64,000 bases of DNA from Macrostomum lignano (taxonomy: Eukaryota), in assembly GCA_002269645.1 (NCBI GenBank), contig NIVC01000126.1:682001-746000 (forward strand), written 5' to 3'. The notes under the pieces were generated by a model, which did no database searches, had not been told where the DNA came from, and saw nothing but the letters and a program-made list of their open reading frames with translations. Position numbers and translations under genes: made by a program. The first letter of the stretch is position 1. Each line of letters opens with the position of its first letter. Positions 21,265 through 46,682 of this stretch are shown here, piece by piece.

Positions 21265-21302
21265 GTCTGTCTGTCTGTCTGTCCGTCTGTCTGTCTGTCC
21301 GT
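20985..21302. repeat. (GTCT)n microsatellite
   Basis: Direct reading. Confidence 0.95.
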
Positions 21303-24640: not shown

Positions 24641-24833
24641 CATGGGTGGCAGCTGGCGGGAGCTTGTGGCACTGGGGGCACATGCCCCCCCCCCCCCAGA
24701 AAATGAGTTCACGCAACAACTTTTAGTGCTTTTTCTGATTTCAGGCCCTAATAAACAATTAAAAGGTACCTATGCCCCCCTTGCCCTGTGCCTAGTGGTG
24801 CCCCCCCCCAAATATTAGGCTCTGCCGCCCCTA
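24641..24833. mobile_element. 193-bp hAT-like MITE
   Basis: Exact 8-bp direct repeat AAGCTAGG at 24633-24640 and 24834-24841 flanks imperfect 12-bp TIRs (CATGGGTGGCAG / CTGCCGCCCCTA). Confidence 0.6.
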
Positions 24834-27800
24834 AAGCTAGGGGTACCATAGGGGCCTAGAAGATATTATTTATTAGGCCTAATCTTTGTCGATAAACCTG
24901 GTTACTAAAATTTAATAGTCATTTAAACTTAAACTAAAGATTATTTTACTTACTTCGCTAAATGTAAACTTTTTTACTTTCAACCTATCTATGAGATTGG
25001 AAGAAATTGTTAATTTAAACTTAAAGCAGTAAAATACTAAATATTTGGCAAAGTTTTTTTTAGAATTATTAATTTATAGGCCTAAATTAGTCCTTTTTTA
25101 TCTAATTTTTTAAAACATATTATATAGCATAGCCATAGGAATTTACTCAATTTTTTCTACATAGTATTAGGATAATATCTTGCATATAGTATAATATAGT
25201 ATATAGATATGATTATCTAAGCTATTTATTGTTAGGTTTTTTTGCTAGGATAGCTATGCAATAGTATTTAGCCATAGACAAACTATAGAAAGCCATAGAC
25301 AACAGAAATCAATTTGGTTTTAACTGCAAGCAATTTGGGCCATAGCTAGAAGGCATAACTAAAGCAAAGAATGGCACAAAGAAGACCATATACTAAAATC
25401 TATCTAGTGGACAGAGAGAGGATAGTGAATGCATACGTGATGTGAAATAAACCAAATTGGTTGTAAAAAAAATCAAATTGCTCGTTTACTTCAGTTCTTA
25501 GTCTATGGTAAACTATGACTTCTGCTAAACTATTTGCAACATACCAAATTGGACGCAGTAAAAACCAAATAAGAAGCAAAAAGGTATTCTAATAAATATA
25601 TATATTCATAAATATATTCTTAATTACAAAAAACTAAAATAGCATAAGCTTTCAAGGCTTTTTATCAAACCATAATCTTGGTCTTGGTTATTAGTTAACA
25701 TTTATAGGCTTAGTTAATATGATAGGCTTTTATAATACCTAGGAAAATCCAAGTTTGATTATATATTATAGTAGAAAATAGTGTATTAGATATAAAAATA
25801 TAATTAAGCACTCAAAGTCATTCATAAATATGAAGCCTTTCATTGCTACTTTTTCAGTTGTAAAATCTATTTTATAGAACATTGTTTTATTGCTTTGTTT
25901 CTTTTTTTATTTTTTCTCTATTTTGTTATATCTTTATAGTGTATTACCTTAGAAAAAACTAGGTAGCTTGTTTATACTTGATTTGCTTTTTGTTAAAGAT
26001 AGTACATTTTCCTTTTTGCCAAATATCATGCAATTTCATGATATTAGCAAATATATATATGATATATATATACAATATATATTATAGCACTTTTTAGTTT
26101 TTTATCATGTTTTTTATTTTATTCTATAATATTCCTAAATTTGTATCCTAATTGAAGTATATTGCTTTGCCTTAAATGCATTAGATACTAGATATTTATC
26201 CTAATTGTGCAATAGTAAGAAACAAAAAATACTCATTTATGGGTTTAAAAATAAGAAAATAGTGTGACTAACTATGACTTTCTTAACATAGTTAAATATG
26301 TAGTCATCTAATTAGTGAAAGCCTCAGAACTACACTCTTAATAGTTGCACTATATCATTATAGTATACTATGCCACCACTAGGCTGATCTATGCTGGATG
26401 CTATTTACTAAAATGCCTATGTACAATGTCCTATGTCCTAATACAAATCAGGATTTGTATAATAAATTAGACCCATAAAATATATAATTCCATGTGTGAT
26501 TTTTAAAAATCTTATTTAAATTAATTAAATTTTTTATATTTTACCAATTTTACCAAAAATAGCACAAATGTCCTTAGCATAGAAACTTTGTGCCAAGACT
26601 AAAAATCTTGTCCTAAGACCAACTTAAATGGCAAAGGGCATATATAAATATAATAAAATACCATAAATCTGGTGGTTAAATTTGCCATTTATCTAACAAA
26701 ATATATACACTAACTTTTATTTTTAAAAGTTTGGTTAAGATTGGAAATCAGACAAAAGACAAAATATCAGTAATTAGAATGGGATTTACTCACATTATAT
26801 TAAAATTATAGTAATATTAAAATATTTATATCTAGCTGTAATATATATGGTATTGATACTTTATGGGAACTGATTAGCTATACCAATAAACTTTAGGAAA
26901 CTATTCTGGTCTACTAGCCTTATCCTATTTTTAAATACTAAATAAAAAGTGGCTAATAGCCATTTTAGCTATTGGTATTTTTATATATAATAAACCTATT
27001 TTAGAATTATAAATGATTTAATGCATTAAAAATGACCAAAGAAGCATTGGAACTAAAATTGTGCCTATGGCTTTGATACAATAATGAAAAGGAAGAAAAA
27101 ACATTATTTAACATTTAGTAAATTTCTGAAAAAGGCTCTAAAAATTCATCAACTAAAACTAACACAAGCTTAGTTTTTCATATACTAGGCTAGTATAATT
27201 ATAGAGTTCCTGCAATTCAAATGCATAGACACAAATCTTAGTCTTCTGCCTTACACCAGGGTGGCAAGAACACTAATACACTCACTACATGACCATTGAC
27301 CTTTCCAACCTTCACCACCCTCTCAGCTCAGTCTCCATATATAATGAGTTATCTAAGGATCTCCAATTTAGCTATTCAATCCTTAAATACTTACCAAAAG
27401 AGCTTAACTCACTGATGTGTTCCAGTGCCTTTTCAGCTCACCTCTTGTTGCATGTCTAAACTCCATAGTTCTCATGTTGTGAGGCTCCCTATAGGAAAAA
27501 GTTGTAAAACCACAGATGGCAACTGGTGCACTTTTGAATTTTTTTCTAAAGCACTGTGTGCACACCCTTTTTGTGTGCACACCCTTTTTTGCTAGCTGCT
27601 GCTCTAGCAAATAAATAAAATACATATGGGCAGCCAAAGACAGGCTACAATCAGGACCCCAACCTCTATGGAAGGGGGCCCATATACTCATCACTTATAA
27701 TTCTAAAGTGCAATAAAATAGTTAGACTATTCTAAAGTGTGTGTCTGCTGGTTTTCAACATTCTACTAGGGGTGAGGCTTCTTGGGATTAGTGGTGGCAG

Positions 27801-27888
27801 TGATCTAACTTGGTCACATCACATCCCAAGCAAAGAAAGATGCTTCTATTCTTGTTTCAGCCATCCCTGGAAGAGCAATTAGCTTATA

Positions 27889-28686
27889 CTTCGGGTGTGT
27901 CATAAGTTATGTCACTGATGTGAAAACAGAGGAACATGCAATCCCAGATGAACAAAACTGTACCACCCAATAACATAGAGTCCCCCAATATCAATCACCC
28001 TCTGGCAGTGCTATACAGCTTGTCTACCTACACCTACAGCTCAGCCTGCAGGTGTTTTTCCTCCAACTGCCATAACCAGTGCAACGCGGCCTGTTTGACC
28101 TCTTCATGGCTTGTGAAACTCTCTTGGAAAAGTCTGCCTTTAGCCATTTGATGAACAGAAATCTGTCGCACAAGTTTAAGTCCGGGCTGTAGGGACTGTC
28201 AGAGCAGATTCACTCGCCGTGCAGGCAGAAAATGCGAAACAGCCTTACAGGTGTGCGGCCGTGCGGTGTTTATCTGCCACAGAACCTCATCCAGGTGACA
28301 TGGATTTGACCGGAGAGTGCGCTAGAGGTCCCCAGTGTGCCAGGCAAAAGCCGATAAAACTACTGACCATCGAACTTGACGGTTGAGTCGGTTGACCCTT
28401 GATGAGACTCCTTTGTTTGGCGTGAAGGCTACCAGCAGCATGGTCTTCTTGTCCGAGATGGACCTCGTGGTCACGGTCGGCAGCAGTCCCCAGCTCCTAG
28501 CCAGCAGCGATTGTCTGCCTTGCTGCCCTTGCCATCCAGGTGGAGCACAGTGTGCTCCTATGCACGTCTCAAATGCACTGGTATTGCTTCACTAAGTATA
28601 CTTTGCAGCAACACTACCCACAAGTCCATGTGCCTACATATTTTAGACAGAGGCCTGCAGTGACATTACTTATGACACACCCGAAG
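27889..28686 (-). mobile_element. Internally deleted DD34D mariner, 798 bp, both TIRs and TA duplication
   Basis: TA|CTTCGGGTGTGTCATAAG..ATGTCACTG at left, its reverse complement plus TA at right. Minus strand reads WQI(N)TARPH..(P)YSPDLNLCDRFLF with 34 residues between the catalytic positions, allowing one stop and one frameshift. Confidence 0.92.
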
Positions 28687-29010
28687 TATGTGGCTATGTA
28701 TTCCTACTAGAGTATATCTGACTGCTAAAATAAATCCAAATATACTAAATCTCTAAGAATTTAACTATATTTTAATGTATTCAATTTCAGAGCTCATATT
28801 TTCAATTTTAAGCATTTTATTAAGTGTTATGAAAAATGGGAACTCCACCACACACATATATATATAGCTATTTAATGTTTGTTAATAACCAATTTTTTAT
28901 CGTACTGCTTATTGGTATATTTTTATAGATTTCACTTTTTGACTAGTGCCAGTTTGAATCCAGACTAAAGATAAAAATTAATATTCTCCTGTTCTCCAGT
29001 TGTATTCCAG

Positions 29011-32000
29011 ATGGGACGACGAAAAGAAGATCGCAGAAGAAAGCCCAGAATATACAGTTGCCCTGGCCAGAAAGCTATAAAACAATTAATTGTCAGCCAG
29101 TTGCGCCATCCTGCTAAGGGAGTGTGTGCCTCAAATCCGGAATCATGTAGTAGCCGTAAGTGATTTTTGCTGCATTTAGGATGTGCTCTGTAACAAATTT
29201 TTTATTGGTGTGATATTTTTAGTCATCTGTTGTGCTACTGTTTGCAAATCAAGGCAAATTCTACACCAAATATAGAATTTTGTCACCCTCCTGTATAATG
29301 GTCACTTTTCATGAATGTTCACTGGACAATTTTAGTCTTGAAAAGCTCGAAAGCTCGAGGGCACTAAGTAAATAGTGCCCGGAAAATAGCGTGCTTTATC
29401 TCATATAGAGCAAGCATAGACAAATGGTTGAAAAATAAAGCCCGCAAGTTAACTAACTGCTTGGAATAGCGGGCAATATAAGGCTCACACCATGCTCTAT
29501 GCGGGAGGGAGTACGACGTTTGCTTGCAGGAAGTTTGCTTGCGGAGCTTTGCTTGCGGAATTTTGCTTGCCGAGCTTTGCTTGCCGAACTTTGCTTGCCG
29601 AGCTATGCTTGCCGAACTTTGCTTGCCGAGCTTTGCTTGCCGAACTTTGCTTGCCGAGCTATGCTTGCCGAACTTTGCTTGCCGAGCTTTGCTTGCCGAA
29701 CTTTGCTTGCCGAACTATGCTTGCCGAACTTTGCTTGCCGAGCTTTGCTTGCTGAACTTTGCTTGCCGAGCTATGCTTGCCGAACTTTGCTTGCCGAGCT
29801 TTGCTTGCCGAACTTTGCTTGCGGAGCTTTGCTTGCGGAATTTTGCTTGCCGAGCTTTGCTTGCCGAGCTATGCTTGCCGAACTTTGCTTGCCGAGCTTT
29901 GCTTGCTGAACTTTGCTTGCCGAGCTATGCTTGCCGAACTTTGCTTGCCGAGCTTTGCTTGCCGAACTTTGCTTGCGGAGCTTTGCTTGCGGAATTTTGC
30001 TTGCCGAGCTTTGCTTGCTGAACTTTGCTTGCCGAGCTATGCTTACCGAACTTTGCTTGCCGAGCTTTGCTTGCCGAACTTTGCTTGCGGAGCTTTGCTT
30101 GCCGAACTTTGCTTGCCGAGCTATGCTTGCCGAACTTTGCTTGCCGAGCTTTGCTTGCCGAACTTTGCTTGCGGAGCTTTGCTTGCGGAATTTTGCTTGC
30201 CGAGCTTTGCTTGCCGAGCTTTGCTTGCCGAACTTTGCTTGCCGAGCTATGCTTGCCGAACTTTGCTTGCCGAGCTTTGCTTGCCGAACTTTGCTTGCGG
30301 AGCTTTGCTTGCGGAATTTTGCTTGCCGAGCTTTGCTTGCTGAACTTTGCTTGCCGAGCTTTGCTTGCCGAACTTTGCTTGCGGAGCTTTGCTTGCGGAA
30401 TTTTGCTTGCCGAGCTTTGCTTGCTGAACTTTGCTTGCCGAGCTATGCTTGCCGAACTTTGCTTGCGGAGCTATGCTTGCCGAACTTTGCTTGCCGAGCT
30501 ATGCTTGCCGAACTTTGCTTGCGGAGCTTTGCTTGCGGAATTTTGCTTGCCGAGCTTTGCTTGCGGAATTTTGCTTGCCGAACTTGAATTTTGCTTGTCT
30601 GCTTGCTTGTTTTGATTACTTGCGAAGTTGGTCAGTCAATTATTACTTACTACAGATGCTTTGCAAGTGGATTCTTATTCAACGTAAACTGACTTGACAG
30701 TAAGCTTTCAAACTAGGCTTATAGAGTTTCATTCTAAGTATTTAGTATATAGAAATGATGTACATTGATGTACAATGTACGTTCGTTTTCAAAAAATCTA
30801 TTCTGTATTCTGTACTGATGTTGAAACAGTATTCCCAGTTTCAACATCTAGGGCTTTTCAAATCCGCCATATCCTCATGCAAAATCATAACACTATAGGC
30901 GACTTCCACGAATCTTAGAAAATAAAAAATAGAAATACAAAAGCTCACTAATAGGTTCTTTAAGGTTCCGCAAGAAAACTGTGGCTGGCGAACCTCGCCA
31001 AGCAAAATTTCTGCAAGCAAACTTCGGCAAATTTATGTGCAGCAAGCAAATTTCCTGCAAGCAAAGCTCGGCAAGCAAAGTTCGGCAAGCAGACTTCGGC
31101 AAGCAAAACTTCGGCAAGCAGACTTCGGCAAGCAAAACTCCGCTAGCAGACTTCGGCAAGCAAAACTCCGCCAGCAGACTTCGGCAAGCAAAACTCCGCC
31201 AGCAGACTTCGGCAAGCAAAACTCCGCTAGCAGACTTCGGCAAGCAGACTTCGGCAAGCAAAACTCCGCCAGCAGACTTCGGCAAGCAAAACTCCGCTAG
31301 CAGACTTCGGCAAGCAAAACTCCGCCAGCAGACTTCGGCAAGCAAAACTCCGCCAGCAGACTTCGGCAAGCAAAACTCCGCTAGCAGACTTCGGCAAGCA
31401 GACTTCGGCAAGCAAAACTCCGCCAGCAGACTTCGGCAAGCAAAACTCCGCTAGCAGACTTCGGCAAGCAAAACTCCGCCAGCAGACTTCGGCAAGCAAA
31501 ACTCCGCCAGCAGACTTCGGCAAGCAAAACTCCGCTAGCAGACTTCGGCAAGCAGACTTCGGCAAGCAAAACTCCGCCAGCAGACTTCGGCAAGCAGACT
31601 TCGGCAAGCAAAACTCCGCCAGCAGACTTCGGCAAGCAAAACTCCGCTAGCAGACTTCGGCAAGCAAAACTCCGCCAGCAGACTTCGGCAAGCAAAACTC
31701 CGCCAGCAGACTTCGGCAAGCAAAACTCCGCTAGCAGACTTCGGCAAGCAGATTTCGGCAAGCAAAACTCCGCCAGCAGACTTCGGCAAGCAAAACTCCG
31801 CAAGCAAAAGTCCCGCACTGCACAGCTTTTTGCACAGAGGCTGATTTGAATGCGAATAGCTAAAATTTCAACTGCTTCTGGTTACTGTTCCAAATTCATA
31901 ATAGTCTTTTGTAAAACCAGTGTTCCCAAGTAGGTAAAATGGTGGACCGGGGTTGGAGTAGAATAGGTGACTTATATTATAAAAATAGTTGCTCTTTAAA

Positions 32001-35000
32001 GTCTCGGAAATTAGTCCTTTTTAATTTACTAATTAGATAGACTGTTAATAAAGCCGAATGCTCTCATTATCTATAATAATTTTCTGGAACATATACTTTA
32101 GATACTAGAAGTAGTATCATAAAAAGAGAGCTCTCCTGTGAGAGAAATGTTATTGTGATTTTTTATAATTCGATAGAGTAAAGCTTTCTTTTTAATTTTT
32201 AAAACCTTTTTGAACTCTTAAAATAATATCAATCTAATTGCTACATCCAATTTAGAATTCATCTCATCGTCATTTTTTAACTTTCCTGTGTCATACCCAT
32301 CACCATCTGGTGCAAAGCAATACCATGTCAAGTCAAGCATGCTTACCTTTCCCTGTTTCTGATTCTCCTCGTTTAAGGGCCGGAAACGCAATCGTCTGAA
32401 CTTCCGGAGCCTGACGCTGAGTTCGTCTATTCTGCGCATCATCAACGGGTGCATGATTCCGCAGAGCTATGGGATCACCATTTTGCAGAATTCGTAACAG
32501 GATTTGGTCACCATTTTTCTCCAACGGTTAAATGCATACTATGCCATGGCAACACCAGCGAAAATAGCTACCGATGCTTGCAATGTGACTTAATGACCGT
32601 CTGCCTTCCGTGCCTGCAGCACCAGCACCGACACTCTCCACCTCATTTGGTGCAGCGTTGGAATGTAAGAAGTATTGATCTATTGTGGTAGGATTAAACT
32701 ATTGTGATAGGATTGATCTATTGTGATAGGATTGAACTATTGTGATAGGATTGAACTATTGTGATAGGATTGAACTATTGTGATAGGATTGAACTATTGT
32801 GATAGGATTGATCTATTGTGGTAGGATTAAACTATTGTGATAGGATTGATCTATTGTGATAGGATTGAACTATTGTGATAGGATTGAACTATTGTGATAG
32901 GATTGAACTATTGTGATAGGATTGATCTATTGTGATAGGATTGAACTATTGTGATAGGATTGAACTATTGTGATAGGATTGAACTATTGTGATAGGATTG
33001 AACTATTGTGATAGGATTGAACTATTGTGATAGGATTGAACTATTGTGAAAGGATTGAACTATTGTGATAGGATTGAACTATTGTGATAGGATTGATCTA
33101 TTGTGGTAGGATTAAACTATTGTGATAGGATTGATCTATTGTGATAGGATTGAACTATTGTGATAGGATTGAACTATTGTGATAGGATTAAACTATTGTG
33201 ATAGGATTAAACTATTGTGATAGGATTGAACTATTGTGATAGGATTGAACTATTGTGATAGGATTGAACTATTGTGATAGGATTGATCTATTGTGATAGG
33301 ATTGAACTATTGTGATAGGATTGAACTATTGTGATAGGATTGAACTATTGTGATAGGATTGAACTATTGTGATAGGATTGAACTATTGTGATAGGATTGA
33401 ACTATTGTGATAGGATTGAACTATTGTGATAGGATTGAACTATTGTGATAGGATTGAACTATTGTGATAGGATTGAACTATTGTGATAGGATTGAACTAT
33501 TGTGATAGGATTGAACTATTGTGATAGGATTGAACTATTGTGATAGGATTGAACTATTGTGATAGGATTGAACTATTGTGATAGGATTGAACTATTGTGA
33601 TAGGATTGAACTATTGTGATAGGATTGAACTATTGTGATAGGATTGAACTATTGTGATAGGATTGAACTATTGTGATAGGATTGAACTATTGTGATAGGA
33701 TTGAACTATTGTGATAGGATTGAACTATTGTGATAGGATTGAACTATTGTGATAGGATTGAACTATTGTGATAGGATTGAACTATTGTGATAGGATTGAA
33801 CTATTGTGATAGGATTGAACTATTGTGATAGGATTGAACTATTGTGATAGGATTGAACTATTGTGATAGGATTGAACTATTGTGATAGGATTGAACTATT
33901 GTGATAGGATTGAACTATTGTGATAGGATTGAACTATTGTGATAGGATTGAACTATTGTGATAGGATTGAACTATTGTGATAGGATTGAACTATTGTGAT
34001 AGGATTGAACTATTGTGATAGGATTGAACTATTGTGATAGGATTGAACTATTGTGATAGGATTGAACTATTGTGATAGGATTGAACTATTGTGATAGGAT
34101 TGAACTATTGTGATAGGATTGAACTATTGTGATAGGATTAAACTATTGTGATAGGTGCGATATAGAATGTAAGTTTTTAGCGCCTTCCTTTTTACTATCG
34201 TCTTTTTTAGGGAAGCTTCTATGAGACACAAGCGACATCAGCGATTCTGAAGTGTAACTGTGAAATGGATTCTAACACTGTTCCTGTAACCCTTTTCCTG
34301 TTTGATGGTACGTAATTTGACTTTTTAATCTTATGTTACTATTACTGATGCTTTAATATGATACTTGTGTAGGCGGTGCAAAACTATAGTTGAATAGCAT
34401 ACACGCATAGATAAGCAGTATATTGTTCATATATCCGTATTATCAGCACTTTGACTGTGAAAAATTAAATGTTCTTTCAAACATTTTCATTATCCGTTTA
34501 CATTCATTTAACGTTAATCCTTGTTCTTAAAATACTCATATGCAGGCCAGCTAGTGGAAGCTTCGGTATGCAGCTGCGACGTTCGCGGTACTCTTCTTCG
34601 AAACGGGTTCTGGCCTCTCCAGCCCGGAGGAGAGCAGTCCATACGCCGTGCTGTTCACATTCGCGCTCTCCTTCTGCTGGATGCAGTTCAGCTTCAATGT
34701 GGGGCATCATTGTGGAGCGCATGCAATGCCCTGAGAGATTTCCGAAATTCGCTTTGGGAACCCCGAGGTGTAAGTATTTTTATTATTCTTAGGCATCAAT
34801 ACTTTCAATATTAATATATTCTAAATAAAACGTAGTTAAACTGCTCCCTAAACTGGCAGTTTTCGTACAATAGGCAGCTGGCTGCTTCTTTTTAGCATAG
34901 GATAGTCATTGTAAAGTTTAGATGCACCAACTAGGAGAAGAAAACAATGACTACAAAACTTTGAAAACAAAACATCACTTTATGCGTGCGTTTGAAAGTA

Positions 35001-38000
35001 TCGTTTTATTCTTTCCCATACTTACACATAATTCATGTTTTCACATACTTCCAGTGCTGATGCACGTATTTAGTTTTTGTTGTGAAAATTATTCTATTTA
35101 ATTTGTGTTCCAAAAGATACAACTCTAAAAAATAGAGCTTCCCTGCGTTCAATCCAAAGTCCAATCGTAAGAGTCTGTCCGACTTGTTAATAGTAGCATT
35201 GAGCCCCGACATGCTCGTAGGTTCCTCTAACAAGTATAGTTGTTTTCAGGATACAATTGTATAGTTTACGGACTGGCTAGCCAAGATTCTAAAATTAAAC
35301 GTCCTTTGCCACAGTTAAAGCACTTTTTCATTAGATTTTTTCCTATTTTTGTGTCTATTGTGTAGGCGGAAATGTACCGGGCTCTCAACTCATTCGGTGC
35401 TTTTGCTGCATTTCGTCGAGTGCTTTCCGTTGCGCGGTGGCCTGAATTGCCGAACTGTCCTGCTTGCTTTGTTGTGAGTATTTTTTAGCCTTTTTCCGCC
35501 GTTTTTGCCCCAAGCGGGTTGGGGGAACCCCTCCCCCTTGACGATTATTTTTGCTGCACCCGAACGGAGCAACGCAGGCGCACGAAATTCAAGAACACGC
35601 CGTCATGATGGGGGTGAAAGGCTACAGAGTCAAGTTAAGGTCCTCCTGCAGTCGACAGTTGCCCATTGTGAACGCTTGATCAGTGATATTGGGCTTTTCT
35701 GCATCAGAGTCGTCATAGACGCCTGTCGCCTGGTGGCATCCGCTGAAGGTCCAGAAGTTCCGTCCAAGTGACGACCACTGGTCGCTGCTTCTAGAGGCGA
35801 TGCAGGCACATGTTTTCAAGACACTGATGACGTATGAAGGCTCAGCAAGGCAGCGCTGAGACAGGGTTGACTCGAGTGTGGGGTGTTCTGAATACATTAG
35901 CACGAATGGGAAAATCCTACCTGGAAAAATCGTTGATTATCTCGACAGCCCGAAAGGGTGGTGACTTGATTTATTTTTCATAAAGTGCGCAACAAAAAGT
36001 TAAACCTTGTTCTTGAATTTCGTGCGCCTGAGTTGCTCCGTTCGGGCGCAGCAAAAAAATCGTCAGAAGTGCGTTCCCCCTCTTTGGGGTTTCTACTGTT
36101 AATTAGCATTTATACTTATCATTCTGTTTTTTGGTTGCTTTGCAACTTTTTGCAACCTTATATGCATACGTTAGGGGCCGTAGCCCAGCGGTAGCGCAGC
36201 TGCTCTGGTGTGCCAGCGACCCAGGCTCGATTCCAAGTGCAGCCATTAATTTGGGGCTGAATTGGAATCTCGGCTTGGCTCTGCTCGTGCAATTAACGGC
36301 CTTGAGAGCCAACATCCCAAGGCGCAGTGAAGTGTACATGCCTAACGATAAAATAAAGTTAGGGCCGCTGTACACTCCTGTGTGAGTGTGTGCCTGCGTA
36401 CGTATCCGCGCGCTTGTCTGCCTGCTCAGGGGAGTCGGCGGAATGGGCAGTAATGCCTCTCGCCGGTTATGTGCCAATGACGCTTAAAGTGCGCCTGGGT
36501 GCACACAACCCCCTGCCTTTAATAAAAAAAAATAATAAATGCATACGTTGTATCTCTTCGTTCCTCTTTGTACTACAGGGTGGCGTGTCCTCAAAGCCAC
36601 TCTTTCTGCTCTTGGACGCGTGCTTCGGCATGAAGCACAAAGTGACGGCGAATTCGGGCCACTCAGTTCAAGCAGAAGCTGGGTACTTTATCACCCCCGA
36701 TATCGAGTCCAATGTCACAGCGGCGGACGACTCCTGCGCTAATTGGAGGGCTGGTCGGGGCGAAAGCTTGCTCTCAGCATCTCAGCATCGGCTGTACGAC
36801 GTATTCGGTCTGTTTTCCGGCATCTGCAGACATGGCTCCGTTGTTATGTTGGAAGATCTAGTGACCCCCGGTGAAAAGTGAGTCTAATATCTATCAATTT
36901 TTCGTGAATTTTGATCGTCTGTGATTTTTTGTACTTTCTAGTGTATTTAAACCTTTCTCAATCGGTATTTAGACACATACACGCTATGTAATCCAGCAAG
37001 TTTTAGTTTAATGCGATTGCGGTCTTGCTCAAACTTTACAACTTTTTGCAGTTGGTAACTATAAAATTGAGGTGAATTAGCATTTTAACCTTTGCACGCC
37101 GGAGCTAGAAATACAAAAGCTCCGTTCCTGGGCCTTTCATATTGCCTGTTCTGGTTCCAGAACCAGAACCAATTTGTGAAGTATAACTTTTTGTCTCCAT
37201 ACCTAGAGGGAGATACGTGCTATAAAGTTTTTATTATTGAATGACAATCGCCAAGAAGAAAGTGAAAAATTGTGCTAAGTGAGGTTGTTAAGGCAGTCAA
37301 ACATTCAACAATTGAATAGTTATATACTGCATGCTGTTTTTCTAAGAACATCCGAACCGATTCTGATTCTGGAATTGGTAATATGAAAAGCCTCCCTGCC
37401 GACATGGTCAGTTGGGCTGGCCATAGACTATAGCTAGAATCTTAATGCGCCCCTGTGCAAAGCCTTTCTAGCCGAGAAGGGAGCATTTTATACTTGGCTT
37501 GGGCAAATCTAAGGTCGAAAAACAGTTTCAAAGTGCATTTCACTTAATGCTCTCTAAATAGATTATGCAGTGTGTACACTCGATATGTAGCTATAGACTC
37601 TACAGTTCACTTTAAAATCTGCAAACAGGCCTTTTTGAAAGAGAAAGCACTGCACCTCCTTAATACGAGTAGTGCATCATTTTATTGAAAAGTAAATCAG
37701 CTACAACCATGGACATTTTGCATACATCGGATTCTGAAACTGATGATGTCATCACAGAGAATGCTGAAACCGAGTCGCTGCATTTCATTGCAGATAAGTA
37801 GGACTTCTTTCACCCATTTTTCGTATTATCAGCGTTGCTGACCATGTCGGCAGGAACGGCGTTCTGTGGGAACGGCACAAAACTTTTTTTTACCATAGAC
37901 TCAAAAATTACAGCAGCAGTAAATGCTGTTGGTCCATCGTCAGCTCTGCCAAGGAGTTCTATACTTAGCAGCCTGGAGTGGAAGCGAGTTTTACCACATG

Positions 38001-40351
38001 AGGCCACGCCAATTGTAAAGACAAGCAGCCAGCACTGAATGTCTATGGCTCTGTCTGATTCTGTCTATGCTAGTCTGGCCTCATGAGACGTAACTCGCTT
38101 CCACTCCAGGTTGCTTCTTATAGAGCTCCTTGGCTCTGCTGACCATCCGGCAGCTTAAAGTTAATGATAACAGCACTTAACTGCTGCATATTATAGGCAT
38201 AACCTAGCAGCCAACGTTAAAAAATAAGGTATAATATGTTTCATCCTCCGTTGCAGAAATTTACTCCTGTACTGCACCGGTACAGCTGGCTATAGTACAT
38301 CATAATTTTTGCTTAACCGAATTATGCGCTCTAAAGCTCATTTTCATGACAACAGACATTTTGATGACCCTGCTGCTCTTTACAGGGCGTTGTTTTCAAT
38401 ATAGTATGTGTTAAATTAATTAACACTTAACCTTTTGTCCCTTGTATGCGTCCTTAGTATTCAATAATAATGCTTCTTGTTATATCCCTAAAATTCAGCC
38501 TTCTAAAATTAATTTCATCACTTAAGTCAAAGGGCTTGGAGACTCGTCTCAAAATTACTCGTTTCAAAATAGTGGGTCTCTTTATTTCCTTAATAAGACT
38601 AAATTCAAGATATTCATCTTGCACGTGACTTGGCGTTGGTTGCAACTGCCAAAAATAATCGTAAATTAAATAAATTTCCTAAAAGCAGAACCATTTCTTC
38701 TATCTAGTCGCAGCATATCTGAATCATATGGAATCCAGTCGGGGTAAATTGTCAGACGAAATGATTAATCCTTACATTATACATGCTTCGCATGACAGTG
38801 CTATGCATGCAGAAAGTTTTTGTCTAAATAAAAAGCAGGAGTAATATTTGCTGTTGAATGATGCATGACTTATCCAGACTATTTAATTTGTAGATGTGAA
38901 GATGAGATATGAACGGGGTAAATGTAAAGCATACCATGCAATCATTAGTCTTCGTAAACTTGGATGCATTTCTCTCTCTCTCCCCTTTATTGGTTATTAA
39001 GTTGCTTTCTGACACTAGCTCTATTTACAACGTCTTTCCCTTTTAGACTTAATTATGCGAAGTCGATGGTCCATAACTTCTTAAGTGGGCTTCCATCGAG
39101 CTGCAAAGCCATCATCAGCTACGATGTGGCTTGTAAGCTATCGAGCCACTTTCACCAAGACGAGCGACTTCGGTTTGCTGTGCCTGCATTTCACGCCTAC
39201 GGTCACACAGCTGCCTGCCAATTGAAGTCCGGGATCCGCGCCACCGAAGGTGCCGGGTTAACTGATGGCGAGGCTGTTGAACGATTCTGGTCAGAGTTGC
39301 GCCCGATAACGAAGCAAACTAAAGAGATGACGAAGAGAAATCGCCAGGACTTCCTGAACTTTGTCTGCAGTAGCCGTAACTTAGCTCTTGTATTCAAAAT
39401 TGGTAAGCAAGTCGCAACTTCCCTGCAATCTCTGCATTTCTATGTCGGTAATTTAGTATTTTATTGAAAAAAAATTATTTCGTTCTAGGACTCTGGCTGA
39501 TAGAGCGTCAACGGCTCCAAGCGAAGACTCTGCGCTACCTAGAAGGCGCGTCTGGCGATGCGACCAAAATAGGTATTTTCATTTTTTCTTTTGCTTCCTA
39601 TTTTTCCTTTTGCTGCTCCCCTTTTTAAGAAGCAGCGATTCGTCTCGCCTTTTTTGGTTAGTTTTTTATTGTCAGCTATGTGCATTTAAGTGACTGATGA
39701 AACCCTTGCATTTTCTATGTAGATGACGAAGCCGAGCGTATTCTCGAAATATACGAAGCAAACCAAGCTGCATCCCGGCAACGAACACGCGATAAGGAGG
39801 CGACGATAAAATTTTTGCACGTGCAAGCTTGCGATCGAGAGTTTCTCTCGCGCTATCTGCTAACCTCGAGGGGACAAAAAATGGCAGCTCATCTGAGAAA
39901 TGTAATTAACAAAAGCTTGGCCAGCAGCAAGACACATGTAAAAAACTACAACCAGGACCATCTCGAAGCACCACTCGACTTTGAAAGCGTTAGGTACCCG
40001 AGTTCGTCTGCTTTTAACGAGCTGCCTTCGGATGTATGCCACGCGATCCAGGCCATTAAACACCGTAATCTCCAACAGAGGCTTCAAGAGGAAGAAGATC
40101 TTTGCTCCGAAGAAGTTCGACGAGTGACGAAGTGGATGGAGTGGTGGCTTAATTTCGAGAGGTTCGACAATTTCGAAAGCTGCCTACGATCTGTAGACGA
40201 AGCTCGGCGACATACTTTAAGGCAACTTTTAAAGCAGCATGGATGCTTGTTTCCGTCAGAAGCGCCCGTAATCGATCGGATTCTTGCCGATTTCCCTAGC
40301 ATGAATTCTGATCATGACAAATCGGAGACCGAAAGCACGAATTCGGATTAA
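29011..40351 (+). CDS. CxC cysteine-cluster + KDZ (Kyakuja-Dileera-Zisupton) transposase, intact 9-exon gene, ~742 aa; exons 29011-29155, 32378-32664, 34211-34307, 34546-34769, 35366-35473, 36579-36877, 39047-39402, 39489-39572, 39723-40351
   Basis: All 8 introns are GT-AG with matching phases (1,0,1,0,0,2,1,1); 2229 nt with no internal stop. Motifs: CILC..YRCLQC..VCLPC..H..SPPHLVQRWNG, CSC..LLRNGFWP, CPAC, LLDACF, GICRHG..GEK..YA, YDVAC, VPAFHAYGH..CQ, GAGLTDGEAVERFWS..KEM..R.DFL. Exon 1 is inferred from phase and splice signals only. Confidence 0.88.
29517..30600 (+). repeat. 14-bp-unit array (CTTTGCTTGCCGAG/A), left arm of an inverted pair
   Basis: Direct reading; lies in KDZ intron 1. 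Confidence 0.93.
31005..31810 (-). repeat. 14-bp-unit array (TTCGGCAAGCAAAA with variants), inverted relative to 29517-30600
   Basis: Reverse complement shares the TTTGCTTGCCGAA core. Confidence 0.92.
32683..34155. repeat. 19-bp minisatellite (TATTGTGATAGGATTGAAC), ~77 copies, KDZ intron 2
   Basis: Near-perfect tandem array. Confidence 0.97.
35539..36065. mobile_element. TIR-bounded non-autonomous element (~58-bp inverted repeats), KDZ intron 5
   Basis: 35539-35597 is the near-exact reverse complement of 36008-36065; no TSD identified. Confidence 0.6.
36174..36538 (+). mobile_element. tRNA-derived SINE (family A) with A-rich tail and 11-bp TSD
   Basis: A-box-like TAGCCCAGCGGTAG and B-box-like GGCTCGATTCC; tail AATAAAAAAAAATAATAA; ATGCATACGTT repeated at 36162-36172 and 36539-36549; second copy at 61493-61848. 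Confidence 0.9.
37949..38133. repeat. Imperfect inverted repeat / hairpin (~58-bp arms, ~70-bp loop)
   Basis: 37949-38006 versus reverse complement of 38076-38133; core CCTGGAGTGGAAGCGAGTT is identical. Confidence 0.75.
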
Positions 40352-40683
40352 AGCAATTATAACTAGCCAGAGTCGCCACTCTACTTTTTAATTTAATGTC
40401 GTTTAGTTTAGAGTTCCGTATCTTAAATTTCGAATTAAAAAGACGACTTTATTATTTGAATTTATTACCAACTTTACTGGCAAGAAATAAATTAAGTGTA
40501 AAATAAATTGTCCAATAGATTGAAATTTACAAGGATATGTACCCATGCAGCATTGTTAAGTGCTAGGGAACATTTAATCAAGACGCTGATAATATTTTAT
40601 GCCATTCTTTGTTGTGGCTTTTTAACTTAGTATTAACCAGTCCAAAAAGACATTTGCAAAGCAGTAGCAATTTGACTCTTTTA

Positions 40684-41652
40684 CTTCGGGTGTGTCATAA
40701 GTAATGTCACTGATGTGAAAACAAACGAACTTGCAATCGCAGATGAACAAAACTGTATTACTCAAAAACATAGAGTCCCCCAATATCAATCACCTTCTGG
40801 CAGTGCTCATACAGCTTGTCCACCTCAGCCTGCAGGTGTTTTTCCTCCAACTGCCATAACCAGTGCAACGCGGCCTGTTTTACCTCTTCATGGTTTGCGA
40901 AACTCTTCTTGGAAAAGTCAGCCTTCAGCCATTTGAACAGGAATCTCTTGCAAAAGTTGAAGTCTGGGCTCTAGGTACTGTCAGAGCATATTCACTCGCC
41001 GTGCAGGCAGAAAATTCGAAACAGCCTTCAGGTGTGCAGCCGTGCGGTGTCCATCTGCCACAGAACCTCGTCCAGGTGACATGGATTTGACCGGAGAGTG
41101 CACCAGAGGTCCCCAGTGTGCCGGAAAAAGTCGATAAAGTACTGGCCATTGACCTTGGTGTTCGGTGGAGTTGTGCAGATGGAGACTCGTTTGTTTGGCG
41201 TGAAGGCTACCAGCAGCATGGTCTTCTTGTCCAAGATGGACTTCCTAGTCACCATCGGCCTGGAGTCCCCAGCTCCCAGCCAGCAGCGATTATCTGCCTT
41301 GCTGCCCTTGCCATCCAGGTGGAGCCAGCTTTCATCCTCAGCAACCAGGCAGTTTAGGATGTCATTCAAGCCCCGGCTGCTGAACACCTTGCGAATCTGC
41401 TTGGTGCAGGCGTCTTGTCGAGATTCATGGTGATTTTTGTTCGCTGCATGGACGATTTTTCATCGCGTTGCACTTGTTAAATCTGCTTGGCGTATTCTTG
41501 CGATAGCTTGGGCCATAAACAACCTATGCACGTCTCAAATGCACTGCTATTGCTTCACTAAGTATACTTTGCAGCTACACTACCCACAAGTCCATGTGCC
41601 TACATATTTTAGACAGAGGCCTGCAGTGACATTACTTATGACACACCCGAAG
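40684..41652 (-). mobile_element. Internally deleted mariner, 969 bp, same family as 27889-28686
   Basis: Same TIRs and TA flanks. Minus-strand remnant ILNCLVAEDESW..KKTMLLVAF..VNGQYF..WQMDTARLH..SPDF..RFLF, with stops and frameshifts. Confidence 0.92.
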
Positions 41653-42814
41653 TACTCAATTATAAGTTTTCGTACAGTGCAATTTTAACCAAAATATGTA
41701 AAAACATGTATTCTTTGTTCATACTTTCTTATATGTACGAGTTGTTGTATACGTAAAAGTTGTTTTTTCTGTAACAAAAAATGCTATATTATATTATTGA
41801 AGCTAACCAATCCGCCATAGTCCAGAAAGTGAAACTGGGTAAAAATTACGCCAACTGTCTTTTTTACAGGGCATTTATTTAGAACTAGTAGTGAATATGC
41901 TGCTGCAGACAATACTCATTTTTAGCTTTTGCTTTACAGCATGAGTACTTTCAAGCAAACTGTTACAACTTTGTGAACGTTTGAATGCATTTTTATAACT
42001 GCTTTAGCACCTGGATAGCTTCCATTGTGAATATTTTCATTAGCGACGTGATTTTCTACTGCATTACAATCCAATTTTGTGGTAATGCTTATTGACCCCA
42101 GTTAAATATTCATAGAAGGCCATGTAATTAGGTAAACAAGCAGTCCCTCTCTATATATAACGCGATTATGTTTACAAAGCTAACGTTTAACTGTCCTATC
42201 CACCTTACATTATACTACATTTTAATAACGCAGGAGTCTTTTACATATCTCTTCGTATACGATAAAAAGATACAGATTGCTATTTATTAAAGAGAATTCT
42301 ACTTTGAACACAAAGGAAATGTGTTTTCTGATCAGATCTCTGTTTGAGGTCCTAGGCTGGTCTTTAAGGACTAATACCGCACTGTCTGCGGTTACAGGAA
42401 AAATTTCTACTATATTAAAGAGTTTGTCTCCAAAAACTTACCTAAGCTGCTAATACGGTCTTTGTAAGTCAACTTGCATTCTCCCAGGTAACAATCGTAA
42501 CAATATGTAACATTACGTAACAATAACGATAACTCTGTATCGTAACAATATGTAGCATCCATTAGTCTTCAATATAAATATATAATATAATATCAATATC
42601 AATATAAAATAAACTTATTGTGCTCCGAAGTAGGCATTCAATCAGAGTGCCGCAACTGTGCAGAAAACTAATGCATTTTAATAACTGCAGTGACGCTCTT
42701 TAACATTTTGGATTATTTTTCTTATTATGGTATAGGGAAAAAAGCGGAAAGTGAATTTTCACCAAATTTCATGACCGGGGAAGAAGATAATTCGCTAGTC
42801 TTCACGTGGGAGAT

Positions 42815-43540
42815 TTGCCAACTGTTACACGGGGGCATGGGGAGAGATGAATATTCGCCAACTGTTACACGGGGGCATGGGGAGAGATGAATATTCGCCA
42901 ACTGTTACACGGGGGCATGGGAGAGATGAATATTCGCCAACTGTTACACGGGGGCATGGGGAGAGATGAATATTCGCCAACTGTTACACGGGGCATGGGG
43001 AGAGATGAATATTCGCCAACTGTTACACGGGGGCATGGGAGAGATGAATATTCGCCAACTGTTACACGGGGGCATGGGGAGAGATGAATATTCGCCAACT
43101 GTTACACGGGGGCATGGGGAGAGATGAATATTCGCCAACTGTTACACGGGGGCATGGGGAGAGATGAATATTCGCCAACTGTTACACGGGGGCATGGGGA
43201 GAGATGAATATTCGCCAACTGTTACACGGGGGCATGGGGAGAGATGAATATTCGCCAACTGTTACACGGGGGCATGGGGAGAGATGAATAATCGCCTAAT
43301 GTTACACGGGGGCATGGGGAGAGATGAATATTCGCCAACTGTTACACGGGGGCATGGGGAGAGATGAATAATCGCCTAATGTTACACGGGGGCATGGGGA
43401 GAGATGAATATTCGCCAACTGTTACACGGGGGCATGGGGAGAGATGAATAATCGCCAACTGTTACACGGGGGGCATGGGGAGGGATGAATAATCGCCTAA
43501 TGTTTTTACAAAGGGGGATGGGGCCGAGAGATGAAATTCG
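42815..43540 (+). repeat. 40-bp minisatellite (AACTGTTACACGGGGGCATGGGGAGAGATGAATATTCGCC), ~17 copies
   Basis: Direct reading. Confidence 0.95.
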
Positions 43541-44649
43541 CCAAATGTCATTTTTTATACTCGTACATTGTCGTTTCTTGACCCGGACATCACAATCCGG
43601 ATATCACAAGGCAAACTTTGCAAGCAACTTCAACCTGCTTCTGACTTCCAGGGGGATACTGGAAGTACCCCGGAGAACGTAAAGCAGCTTGATATCCGGA
43701 CCGGATGCTTGCAATATCCGGGGGGGGGGAGATCAGAAATTACTTATACTATCTGGGCGGACAGCATGCAAGACATCCGAAGGTAGAATTTACGTGCATG
43801 TTACACTACAAGTAATTACATATACATGTTTGAGCTTACCGTGTGGAATGTACCTACCTACATACGAATTTATAAAACATATTACTTTTAGGGCTCTTTC
43901 CAATATACATGTACGCATCCAATTAAAAATAAGAAATTAACACTGGGAAGAGGGTGTGACGAATATTAATTAGGACATTAATTTGTCTAGACGGATTGAA
44001 CTATACCGACGTGTGCGTCCTATAAGCTGCTGTACATGGAGGCCTGGTGTTATTGTTAAGTATGGTAGGTCCCTGAGTGTATAGCAATTGTAGCATTAGC
44101 ATAGTATAGCATTGGTGCACACTGCCCACCCCACCAGAAATAAACAAACAAGCGAAGTTAGGCTGCGAATGAGCACGAAGGGGCCAGAGGGAAACCAGCA
44201 AGCTGACCTGTTTATTCGTCAGGCAATATTCTACGAATCTTAATAGCTCGTAGTAAATTTAAAAAAAAGGTAAATAAAAGCAACACGAACGAGAGAAAAA
44301 TTTCAACCAGGGCAGTGAGATAACTGCCCCGAAACACGACATAACCCCCCCCCCCGGCCCCCAACCCCACAAGGAGGAGGGGTGAGTGCCGGCGGGGGAG
44401 ATGCAAACATACTGGTATGCAAGGGGGGTGGGCAGCGTTCACAAACGCTGGTTAGCGCCGTAGCACAAACCAATCACCCCACCAGAAAAAAACAGGGAAA
44501 GGCTGCGAAAGAGCACGAAGGGGCCAAAGGGAAACCGGCAAGCTGACCTGTCTATGTTGACTCTGAACCTAGTTGACTCAGCCAACACCAAAAAAGCCGA
44601 AGTACAGCAAAAGCAGCAAGAGCGTAACAAGCACAACAACGAATATTTA

Positions 44650-45520
44650 TCTTCCGCCATCCCCCTTTGTAACATTGGCGAATATTCATCTCTCCCCATG
44701 CCCCCCGTGTAACAGTTGGCGAATATTCATCTCTCCCCATGCCCCCGTGTAACAGTTGGCGAATATTCATCTCTCCCCATGCCCCCGTGTAACAGTTGGC
44801 GAATATTCATCTCTCCCCATGCCCCCGTGTAACAGTTGGCGAATATTCATCTCTCCCCATGCCCCCGTGTAACATTAGGCGATTATTCATCTCTCCCCAT
44901 GCCCCCGTGTAACAGTTGGCGAATATTCATCTCTCCCCATGCCCCCGTGTAACAGTTGGCGAATATTCATCTCTCCCCATGCCCCCGTGTAACAGTTGGC
45001 GAATATTCATCTCTCCCATGCCCCCGTGTAACAGTTGGCGAATATTCATCTCTCCCCATGCCCCCGTGTAACAGTTGGCGAATATTCATCTCTCCCCATG
45101 CCCCCGTGTAACAGTTGGCGAATATTCATCTCTCCCCATGCCCCCGTGTAACAGTTGGCGAATATTCATCTCTCCCCATGCCCCCGTGTAACAGTTGGCG
45201 AATATTCATCTCTCCCCATGCCCCGTGTAACAGTTGGCGAATATTCATCTCTCCCCATGCCCCCGTGTAACAGTTGGCGAATATTCATCTCTCCCCATGC
45301 CCCCGTGTAACAGTTGGCGAATATTCATCTCTCCCATGCCCCCGTGTAACAGTTGGCGAATATTCATCTCTCCCCATGCCCCCGTGTAACAGTTGGCGAA
45401 TATTCATCTCTCCCATGCCCCCCGTGTAACAGTTGGCGAATATTCATCTCTCCCCATGCCCCCGTGTAACAGTTGGCGAATATTCATCTCTCCCCATGCC
45501 CCCCGTGTAACAGTTGGCAA
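44650..45520 (-). repeat. Same 40-bp minisatellite, inverted, ~21 copies
   Basis: Direct reading. Confidence 0.95.
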
Positions 45521-46682
45521 ATCTCCCACGTGAAGACTAGCGAATTATCTTCTTCCCCGGTCATGAAATTTGGTGAAAATTCACTTTCCGCTTTTTTCCC
45601 TATACCATAATAAGAAAAATAATCCAAAATGTTAAAGAGCGTCACTGCAGTTATTAAAATGCATTAGTTTTCTGCACAGTTGCGGCACTCTGATTGAATG
45701 CCTACTTCGGAGCACAATAAGTTTATTTTATATTGATATTGATATTATATTATATATTTATATTGAAGACTAATGGATGCTACATATTGTTACGATACAG
45801 AGTTATCGTTATTGTTACGTAATGTTACATATTGTTACGATTGTTACCTGGGAGAATGCAAGTTGACTTACAAAGACCGTATTAGCAGCTTAGGTAAGTT
45901 TTTGGAGACAAACTCTTTAATATAGTAGAAATTTTTCCTGTAACCGCAGACAGTGCGGTATTAGTCCTTAAAGACCAGCCTAGGACCTCAAACAGAGATC
46001 TGATCAGAAAACACATTTCCTTTGTGTTCAAAGTAGAATTCTCTTTAATAAATAGCAATCTGTATCTTTTTATCGTATACGAAGAGATATGTAAAAGACT
46101 CCTGCGTTATTAAAATGTAGTATAATGTAAGGTGGATAGGACAGTTAAACGTTAGCTTTGTAAACATAATCGCGTTATATATAGAGAGGGACTGCTTGTT
46201 TACCTAATTACATGGCCTTCTATGAATATTTAACTGGGGTCAATAAGCATTACCACAAAATTGGATTGTAATGCAGTAGAAAATCACGTCGCTAATGAAA
46301 ATATTCACAATGGAAGCTATCCAGGTGCTAAAGCAGTTATAAAAATGCATTCAAACGTTCACAAAGTTGTAACAGTTTGCTTGAAAGTACTCATGCTGTA
46401 AAGCAAAAGCTAAAAATGAGTATTGTCTGCAGCAGCATATTCACTACTAGTTCTAAATAAATGCCCTGTAAAAAAGACAGTTGGCGTAATTTTTACCCAG
46501 TTTCACTTTCTGGACTATGGCGGATTGGTTAGCTTCAATAATATAATATAGCATTTTTTGTTACAGAAAAAACAACTTTTACGTATACAACAACTCGTAC
46601 ATATAAGAAAGTATGAACAAAGAATACATGTTTTTACATATTTTGGTTAAAATTGCACTGTACGAAAACTTATAATTGAGTA

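What the first reader, a model, noticed from the sequence alone, without database searches (positions are those of the whole stretch)
29011..40351. Intact, intron-rich KDZ transposase gene: candidate new domesticated transposase or active spliced KDZ element
Seen: nine exons across 11.3 kb splice into an uninterrupted ~742-aa ORF with CxC-type Zn cluster, CPAC, and the putative catalytic set LLD(ACF), YD(VAC), FHAYGH..C and DGEAVER. The introns hold fold-back arrays, a 1.5-kb satellite, a TIR element, a SINE with TSD and a hairpin, but no insertion or stop hits an exon. I found no element TIRs. The ORF track shows only fragments. Known: KDZ transposases occur in fungi (often linked to TET/JBP) and as Zisupton in fish, and HMGXB3 is a host gene derived from this group. 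Inference: purifying selection on a resident gene, i.e. an independent domestication lacking the HMG box (none seen), or a long-lived spliced element. No TET/JBP or SWIM/SUMO-protease domain was recognised.
Basis: partly seen in the sequence, partly recalled or inferred. Interest (0 to 1): 0.88.

Follow-up and report, generated by a model that had tools for sequence, protein, structure and literature searches.

The report
Recently mobile KDZ transposon, multi-exon transposase
The nine-exon, 742-residue KDZ transposase gene is real and intact, but it sits inside a large DNA transposon of the flatworm Macrostomum lignano that inserted recently, so it is a mobile-element gene and not a newly domesticated host gene.

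Summary
Nine GT-AG exons (29011-40351, + strand) splice into a 742-aa ORF with a full-length Pfam KDZ domain (E 1e-40). All residues invariant across the family are present. The same model is already in GenBank as PAA90160.1, a 'hypothetical protein' of Macrostomum lignano, from an annotation built only on RNA-seq.

The domestication reading is not supported. The gene lies in a block of at least 23.3 kb (24003 to at least 47259). A second contig carries this block at about 100% identity but with an unrelated left flank. Two homeologous copies of the window's left flank stop matching exactly at 24002 and continue as an empty site. The block starts with CATCAGTGTCACA. This matches the terminus CACCCGTGTCACA of a 9.9-kb element around a 40%-identical paralogue, which has 259-nt terminal inverted repeats and a 6-bp target-site duplication. 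Four paralogues share six to seven intron positions, and multi-exon transposase genes are a published trait of Zisupton elements.

Best reading: the transposase gene of a low-copy, recently active KDZ/Zisupton-like transposon. The right end and the target-site duplication of this copy were not found. It is a new member of a known kind, of modest interest.

The parts
24003..24027 (+). Left terminus of the mobile block (CATCAGTGTCACAATCACGTAGCAG).
   Evidence: Identity with the second locus L002 starts here, and homology of the two empty-site homeologues L008 and L009 ends at 24002. Thirteen of the first 16 bases equal the TIR start of the paralogous L004 element. The sequence occurs once in the window.
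24003..47259 (+). Minimum extent of the block shared with the second locus at about 100% identity. The KDZ gene is its only long ORF.
   Evidence: 99.6-99.9% identity to L002; no substitutions in the unique parts of the introns and one in the 5-kb upstream arm; no other long non-repeat ORF.
27883..28688 (+). Nested short element with 31-nt TIRs. It looks mariner-like by eye only; Pfam gave no hit for this family.
   Evidence: It is 87.5% identical to the copy at 40678-41654.
28998..28999 (+). AG acceptor at the annotated 5' end of the mRNA, a probable spliced-leader trans-splice site (inferred).
   Evidence: The sequence reads ...ttctcctgttctccag|TTGTATTCCAGATG. The GenBank CDS starts at 29002. 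All four paralogues start at such an acceptor. Gene boundaries in this annotation were set from trans-splice reads.
29011..29155 (+). Exon 1 (ATG; basic N-terminus).
32378..32664 (+). Exon 2 (Cys/His zinc module CxxC..CxxC..CxxC..H..H).
   Evidence: The pattern is conserved in alignment A1.
34211..34307 (+). Exon 3 (KCNC cluster).
34546..34769 (+). Exon 4 (CSC cluster; GFWP motif).
35366..35473 (+). Exon 5 (CPAC). It is 108 nt in three paralogues.
36579..36877 (+). Exon 6 (first half of the KDZ domain; D300).
39047..39402 (+). Exon 7 (second half of the KDZ domain; D413, H436, H440, C444, E462, E465).
39489..39572 (+). Exon 8.
39723..40351 (+). Exon 9 (helical C-terminal region; stop codon TAA at 40349-40351).
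29519..31813 (.). Intron 1: two 28-nt-period arrays in inverted orientation (29519-30585 and 31042-31813).
32674..34155 (.). Intron 2: 19-bp satellite, 78 copies. The second locus carries 342 nt less.
35548..36057 (.). Intron 5: small element with 50-nt TIRs.
36174..36530 (+). Intron 5: tRNA-headed SINE with an A-rich tail and the TSD ATGCATACGTT.
37936..38146 (.). Intron 6: hairpin with 71-nt arms, 80% complementary.
40553..43470 (+). Arm A of a 7.3-kb palindrome that begins 200 nt after the stop codon. It contains a second copy of the nested TIR element (40678-41654) and a 40-bp satellite (42813-43504).
44830..47259 (-). Arm A' (inverted copy of A, 99% identical). It runs into the assembly gap and is complete in L002 up to position 27844.
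47260..47803 (.). Run of N (scaffold gap). Colinearity with the second locus cannot be followed past it.

Best explanation
This is the transposase gene of a large (at least 23 kb), low-copy, recently mobile KDZ/Zisupton-like cut-and-paste DNA transposon of Macrostomum lignano.

Shown here:
- A nine-exon gene whose spliced mRNA is in the RNA-seq-based annotation.
- A 742-aa protein with a complete KDZ domain and every family-invariant residue.
- An exact left terminus at 24003.
- A second, almost identical copy at an unrelated site.
- Empty sites at two homeologous loci.
- A paralogous element with perfect TIRs and a 6-bp TSD, whose terminal sequence resembles this one.

Inferred:
- The protein folds into an RNase H-like core, with D300 on strand 1, D413 after strand 4 and E462/E465 at the following helix.
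- The N-terminal Cys/His zinc module binds the element ends.
- The enzyme excises the element and reinserts it with a short staggered cut.
- The mRNA is spliced-leader trans-spliced at the acceptor at 28998-28999, so expression may depend on read-through transcription and not on a promoter of the element's own.
For: - Gene model and domain. The public RNA-seq-derived protein is identical.
- Second locus: L002 shares 24003 to at least 47259. All nine exons are identical. Outside the intron-2 satellite, the roughly 7.6 kb of intron has no substitutions and a single 1-nt indel. There is one substitution in the 5-kb upstream arm. The left flank is unrelated and carries the FSAF1 gene.
- Empty sites: homeologues L008 and L009 match the window from about 6880 and 8567 up to exactly 24002 (94-99% identity). 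They then read TATTCTAGAAAAAAAG, followed further on by a transhydrogenase (NNT-type) gene.
- Paralogous element: L004 6646-16569 has 259-nt TIRs at 98.5% identity (188 nt perfect) flanked by CTCATT. The motif CA-NNN-GTGTCAC occurs only at those two ends and at the block boundary in all sequence examined. The chance of 13 matches in 16 at a fixed position is about 4e-6 (my calculation).
- Intron positions and phases are conserved in four paralogues.
- Invariant residues D, D, E, H, H and C are present.
- The strand and helix order of the model fits an RNase H-like core.
- Zisupton elements are published as multi-exonic (PMC9297572).
- The closest non-flatworm relatives are multi-copy 'uncharacterized' CxC-KDZ proteins of amphioxus, echinoderms, a priapulid, an oyster and a fish.
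Against: - No right terminus and no TSD were found for this copy. No inverted copy of the left end exists in the 40 kb to the right in the window or in the 26 kb available in L002.
- The right flank of the empty site is not in the window. So either the element is very large, or the scaffold is misjoined at the gap, or the unit moved by an aberrant event.
- Only two copies are known, in an assembly with much redundancy.
- No TIR/TSD pair was found within 10 kb of two other paralogues.
- No solved structure matched the model.
- Transposition was not observed directly.
Confidence: 0.8

Rival explanations
1. It is an independently domesticated KDZ transposase: a resident host gene kept by purifying selection.
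For: - The ORF is intact despite introns swollen by nested repeats.
- It is expressed, correctly spliced, and was not masked as a repeat in the annotation.
- Copy number is very low.
- The CDS is richer in G+C and CpG than the introns.
- Two paralogues show no TIR/TSD within 10 kb.
Against: - The gene is absent from two homeologous loci, with a clean empty site.
- A second copy sits at an unrelated site and shares the exact terminus.
- That terminus resembles the TIR of a paralogous element that has a TSD.
- No orthologue with more than 50% identity exists in any other species in the collections searched.
- The two copies are identical in introns as well as exons, so exon identity says nothing about selection.
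Confidence: 0.06
2. The KDZ element is an immobile relic. In this reading the two copies come from a recent segmental duplication, or from an assembly chimera, whose breakpoint happens to lie at an old transposon end. The ORF is intact only because little time has passed.
For: [quoted passage not shown]
- No right end or TSD was found.
- The scaffold gap at 47260-47803 may be a misjoin.
Against: - The left breakpoint coincides to the base with a TIR-like terminus in both loci and with the empty site in two homeologues. A random duplication breakpoint would not do that.
- The closest homeologue is 99% identical in the flank yet lacks the block. The insertion is therefore young, which fits mobility.
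Confidence: 0.1
3. This copy still encodes an intact transposase but has lost its right end. In this reading it was moved by one-ended or aberrant transposition together with flanking DNA, namely the palindrome.
For: The left end is precise, but no right TIR exists within 26 kb in the gap-free locus. The shared block ends in a 7.3-kb palindrome of non-element-like sequence that carries its own nested element.
Against: There is no direct evidence. The end of the shared block cannot be located because of the gap, and an ordinary right end may lie further right.
Confidence: 0.04

Closest known systems
Zisupton DNA transposons of animals (first described in fish by Bohne et al. 2012; also Pristionchus pacificus, PMC9297572)
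   Same: - The transposase has a KDZ (PF18758) domain preceded by a Cys-rich N-terminal region.
- The transposase gene is multi-exonic, so the element looks like an ordinary gene.
- TIRs are present (seen here in the paralogous element).
- There is evidence of recent insertion from comparison of syntenic loci.
- The closest relatives come from lancelets, echinoderms and molluscs, as reported for the nematode elements.
   Different: - The one TSD seen in this flatworm family is 6 bp (CTCATT, in the paralogue), against 8 bp reported for Zisupton (PMC12730594).
- The protein is shorter (742 aa against up to about 1400 aa).
- No SWIM or ULP domain was seen.
- The unit here is at least 23 kb, and its right end is unresolved.
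- Pfam CxC1/CxC2 models do not reach threshold.
Kyakuja and Dileera elements of fungi (KDZ elements, often carrying TET/JBP genes; Iyer et al. 2014; PMC12730594)
   Same: The transposase domain is the same, with the same invariant residues. The termini begin with CA. Kyakuja lacks TIRs, which would fit the failure to find a right TIR here.
   Different: - No TET/JBP gene or any second long ORF lies in the block.
- Fungal proteins are much more distant (E about 1e-18 against 1e-40 for animal ones).
- Reported TSDs are 7 bp (Kyakuja) and 8 bp (Dileera).
   Same: None established here. I did not compare HMGXB3 with this protein, and the two papers found on it were not read.
   Different: No HMG box is present. 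The gene is not fixed at its locus: there are empty sites and a second copy elsewhere. It keeps an element terminus.
Paralogous M. lignano element around Mlig024767 (PAA89046.1; locus L004 6646-16569)
   Same: - Same nine-exon plan with seven of eight introns at identical positions and phases.
- Same orientation of the gene relative to the left end.
- Related terminal sequence, CAYCMGTGTCACA.
- 40-43% protein identity.
   Different: That element is compact (9.9 kb, introns 105-686 nt) and has both TIRs and a TSD. This one is more than twice as long, has bloated introns, and has no right end identified.

Membership tests
KDZ transposase family (Pfam PF18758) | Match to the KDZ profile above the curated threshold, over its full length. 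| tested here: met
   140 bits against a cut-off of 26.6, E 1.1e-40, profile positions 3-217 of 217.
KDZ transposase family (Pfam PF18758) | Invariant acidic and Cys/His residues of the catalytic core. | tested here: met
   D300 is nearly invariant. D413, C416, H436, H440, C444, E462, E465 and R466 are invariant across 15 diverse members (positions given in the 742-aa numbering).
KDZ transposase family (Pfam PF18758) | N-terminal CxC-type cysteine cluster (Pfam CxC1/CxC2). | tested here: inconclusive
   No CxC1/CxC2 hit at E of 1 or less. However, the Cys/His pattern aligns with relatives that do carry PF18802/PF18803.
KDZ transposase family (Pfam PF18758) | RNase H-like fold of the core. | tested here: inconclusive
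   The model (mean pLDDT 74; core blocks mostly 85-95) has the strand and helix order expected, with D300, D413 and E465 in the usual places. Foldseek of the whole chain against the PDB gave no significant match.
Zisupton-type DNA transposon | Defined termini with terminal inverted repeats. | tested here: inconclusive
   The left terminus is fixed to the base. No right TIR was found. The paralogous element has 259-nt TIRs.
Zisupton-type DNA transposon | 8-bp target-site duplication. | tested here: inconclusive
   The right junction of this copy was not found, so its TSD is unknown. The paralogous element has a 6-bp TSD, not 8 bp.
Zisupton-type DNA transposon | Multi-exon transposase gene. | tested here: met
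   Nine exons, with introns conserved among paralogues. The trait is described in PMC9297572.
Zisupton-type DNA transposon | Mobility: presence/absence at homologous sites and copies at different sites. | tested here: met
   Two empty homeologous sites and a second filled site with a different flank.
   Absent from homeologous loci, present at a second site, and the terminus is retained.
   The two copies are identical in exons and in introns. No orthologue exists in other species in the collections. The paralogues are too diverged.
   No Pfam domain besides KDZ.
TET/JBP-carrying KDZ elements of fungi | A TET/JBP dioxygenase gene inside the element. | tested here: not met
   There is no second long ORF in 24003-47259 apart from remnants of the nested element. 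No such domain is in the KDZ protein.

The most novel reading that the evidence does not exclude
The Macrostomum KDZ elements could form a distinct lineage of the superfamily. Its features would be a 6-bp target-site duplication, the terminus CAYCMGTGTCACA, an old and conserved eight-intron transposase gene, and an mRNA that relies on the host's spliced-leader trans-splicing. This copy would then be a giant unit of at least 23 kb with asymmetric ends, still moving in the laboratory line. Some of the other intact, low-copy paralogues that lack visible TIRs could be truly domesticated.
Probability: 0.25. Interest if true: 0.5.

Novelty: new member of a known kind. Interest (0 to 1): 0.3.

Why it matters
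- It removes a false lead. Intact ORF plus many introns is not a sign of domestication in this superfamily, because KDZ/Zisupton transposase genes are multi-exonic by nature.
- It gives the Macrostomum community a candidate endogenous cut-and-paste transposon that seems to have moved very recently in the DV1 line. That bears on the known karyotype and assembly instability of this model animal.
- The element could in principle be tested as a transgenesis vector.
- It provides a base-exact left end, an empty site, and a compact sister element with perfect ends. Together these make a transposition assay for a KDZ enzyme straightforward to design. I found no solved KDZ structure in the PDB searches, and I did not look for published transposition assays.

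Tried and rejected
- A word-indexed protein search with the KDZ core alone found nothing, although the full protein later found itself. I treat the first result as a failure of the prefilter.
- I tried to measure selection by comparing the two loci. The exons are identical, but so are the introns outside the satellite, so there is no signal.
- I searched for a right end in five ways:
  - the exact and 3-mismatch left-end sequence;
  - the terminal motif on both strands;
  - sensitive BLAST of the left 600 nt;
  - a best-match scan of the downstream sequence;
  - TSD candidates of 6-10 bp.
  All were negative.
- The 40-bp satellite contains CCCCCGTGTAACA, which resembles the TIR core. Equal scores occur by chance in the same scan, so I dropped it.
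- I looked for the right flank of the empty site in the window and in L002. It is absent.
- Foldseek with the whole model was dominated by the C-terminal helices and gave no significant match. I did not make a core-only model.
- A generic TIR-plus-TSD search around two further paralogues found nothing within 10 kb.
- The flanking direct repeats at 27883-28688 and 40678-41654 are copies of a small nested TIR element, not ends of the KDZ element.
- The Bohne et al. 2012 paper is not held. Its features are cited second-hand from PMC12730594 and PMC9297572.
Full report
**What is there.** Between 29011 and 40351 on the + strand, nine open segments join through eight canonical GT-AG introns. Together they form a 2229-nt reading frame of 742 codons with no internal stop. 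The first exon-exon junction works only with the strong donor GTAAGT after 29155 and the acceptor ending at 32377. Pfam places a complete KDZ transposase domain at residues 295-498 (140 bits, E 1.1e-40). No HMG, SWIM, ULP or TET/JBP domain is found. The coding sequence has 51% G+C and a CpG ratio of 1.06, against 41% and 0.79 in the introns.

- inverted 28-nt arrays in intron 1 and a 19-bp satellite of 78 units in intron 2;
- a 510-bp element with 50-nt TIRs, and a hairpin;
- a tRNA-headed SINE with an 11-bp target-site duplication.

**Source and prior annotation.** An exhaustive profile search found a 745-aa public protein identical over all 742 residues. It is PAA90160.1/PAA87534.1, 'hypothetical protein BOX15_Mlig019149g2, partial', of the flatworm Macrostomum lignano. 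The window is part of contig NIVC01000126.1 of assembly Mlig_3_7. That annotation was built only from RNA-seq transcript assemblies, with gene boundaries set from trans-splice and poly(A) reads. Transcripts overlapping annotated repeats were removed (PMC5730564). The nine-exon mRNA thus has independent experimental support, and the gene model is not new.

The annotated 5' end (29002) follows an acceptor...ttctcctgttctccag, at 28998-28999. The three paralogues examined also start at such an acceptor. I infer spliced-leader trans-splicing but could not check the reads.

**The family.** M. lignano encodes at least five diverged relatives, 30-45% identical. I mapped three of them onto their loci. 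Compared with the gene in the window, seven of the eight introns lie at the same alignment column and phase in two paralogues, and six do in the most distant one. The intron-exon plan is therefore old and is a property of the family, not of this gene.

Outside flatworms, the best matches (27-33% identity) are unnamed CxC1/CxC2-KDZ proteins. They come from amphioxus, sea urchins, a sea star, a priapulid, an oyster and a cave fish, and several are multi-copy. Fungal KDZ proteins follow far behind. [quoted passage not shown] Intron richness therefore does not argue for domestication.

**The gene is inside a mobile block.** The identical protein is encoded on a second contig (locus L002). The two loci are colinear from window 24003 to at least 47259, where a run of N begins. 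All nine exons are identical, and so are the introns. Outside the 19-bp satellite, the introns show no substitutions and a single 1-nt indel. The 5-kb upstream arm has one substitution. To the left of 24003 the two loci are unrelated.

I then recovered two homeologous copies of the window's left flank through the neighbouring 365-aa gene. Both are colinear with the window, at 94-99% identity, up to exactly 24002. Both then continue with the same different sequence...gctagcac|TATTCTAGAAAAAAAG, which leads further on to a transhydrogenase gene. These are empty sites. The window carries an insertion that starts at 24003.

**The boundary is a transposon end.** The paralogue Mlig024767 lies in a 9.9-kb unit (L004 6646-16569). 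This unit is bounded by inverted repeats 259 nt long and 98.5% identical, with 188 nt perfect. It is flanked by the direct repeat CTCATT. Its ends begin CACCCGTGTCACAC. The block in the window begins CATCAGTGTCACAA, which is 13 of the first 16 bases identical, and the end has the same orientation relative to the gene. The motif CA-NNN-GTGTCAC occurs nowhere else in the window or in the five loci scanned (L002-L006). By my calculation, the chance of such a match at one fixed position is about 4e-6.

**What remains open.** I could not find the right end or the target-site duplication of this copy.
- No inverted copy of the left end exists in the 40 kb to the right in the window, or in the 26 kb of the gap-free second locus.
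- No short direct repeat of either left flank turns up in a plausible place.
- The right flank of the empty site is not in the window.
- Beyond a 7.3-kb palindrome that begins 200 nt after the stop codon, the two loci can no longer be compared, because of the gap.

Four readings remain possible: the element is longer than what I can see, the scaffold is misjoined at the gap, the ends are asymmetric as reported for Kyakuja (PMC12730594), or the unit moved by an aberrant event. Two further paralogues show no TIR/TSD pair within 10 kb, so I make no claim about them.

**How it most likely works.** In an alignment of 15 diverse members, D413, C416, H436, H440, C444, E462, E465 and R466 are invariant, and D300 is nearly so (742-aa numbering). 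An AlphaFold model (mean pLDDT 74; core mostly 85-95) has the strand and helix order of an RNase H-like core. D300 lies on the first strand, D413 just after the fourth, and E465 on the following helix. A long helical C-terminal region follows. The whole-chain fold search found no solved relative.

I infer a DDE-type cut-and-paste enzyme. Its N-terminal Cys/His module would bind the element ends, and integration would produce a short duplication, 6 bp in the one case seen. This step is inference from the family, not shown here.

**Verdict.** This is an intact, expressed transposase gene of a recently mobile KDZ/Zisupton-like transposon. It is a new member of a known kind in a flatworm, and it is already present in GenBank as a hypothetical protein. 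Modest points of interest remain:
- the 6-bp duplication in the sister element, against the 7-8 bp reported for the superfamily;
- the size of the unit and its missing right end;
- the probable dependence on trans-splicing;
- the very recent insertion in a laboratory model with an unstable karyotype.

Noticed in passing
window 21375-21378 and 21695-21909 (+): An annotated 72-aa gene whose first coding exon is only 4 nt long (ATGG|gtaaga). The protein carries an RRNAI motif like the pseudosubstrate of protein kinase A inhibitor peptides. It was found on one contig only.
   Followed up: partly
window 48179-49657 and 49372-51270 (+): Two overlapping long open frames (493 and 633 aa) just beyond the assembly gap. 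They are not in the gene table of the locus, have no Pfam family, and the 633-aa frame has no PDB sequence match. Whether they belong to the same mobile unit is unknown.
   Followed up: partly
window 569-2794 (-): A SID-1 dsRNA-channel homologue readable as one uninterrupted 742-aa open block (Pfam E 2.5e-117). It has, by coincidence, the same length as the KDZ protein.
   Followed up: no
window 7470-9775 (-) and 54012-60562 (+): Host genes flank the region: WD40-repeat exons that look LST8-like, and exons of a sodium:neurotransmitter symporter (SLC6/SNF).
   Followed up: no
window 42813-43504 and 44640-45522: A 40-bp satellite lies in both arms of the palindrome, in opposite orientation. Its unit contains CCCCCGTGTAACA, which resembles the TIR core of the paralogous element. 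The similarity is no better than chance hits in the same scan.
   Followed up: yes
L002 27873-29882: To the right of the shared block in the second locus lies a 48-bp satellite (18.5 copies). It is followed by the zinc-knuckle tail of a LINE ORF2. The same LINE tail is fused to a KDZ ORF in UniProt A0A1I8HMS9, which looks like a chimeric gene model from the older assembly.
   Followed up: partly
L003 (Logan run SRR30276804, 2935-bp contig) 210-2456: An uninterrupted 748-aa KDZ ORF, 35% identical to this protein. It may be intronless or derived from a transcript. The organism is unknown.
   Followed up: partly
window 27883-28688, 40678-41654 and 46681-47259: Three copies of a small element of about 0.8-1.0 kb with 31-nt TIRs (TACTTCGGGTGTGTCATAAG...). 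Two lie on either side of the KDZ gene in the same orientation and could be mistaken for its ends.
   Followed up: yes
window 4200-12300, 20850-21360 and others: There are many short-period arrays, including (GTCT)n-type repeats and a satellite at 9780-12297 whose copies are offset by multiples of 30 nt. This fits the very repeat-rich genome reported for this species.
   Followed up: no
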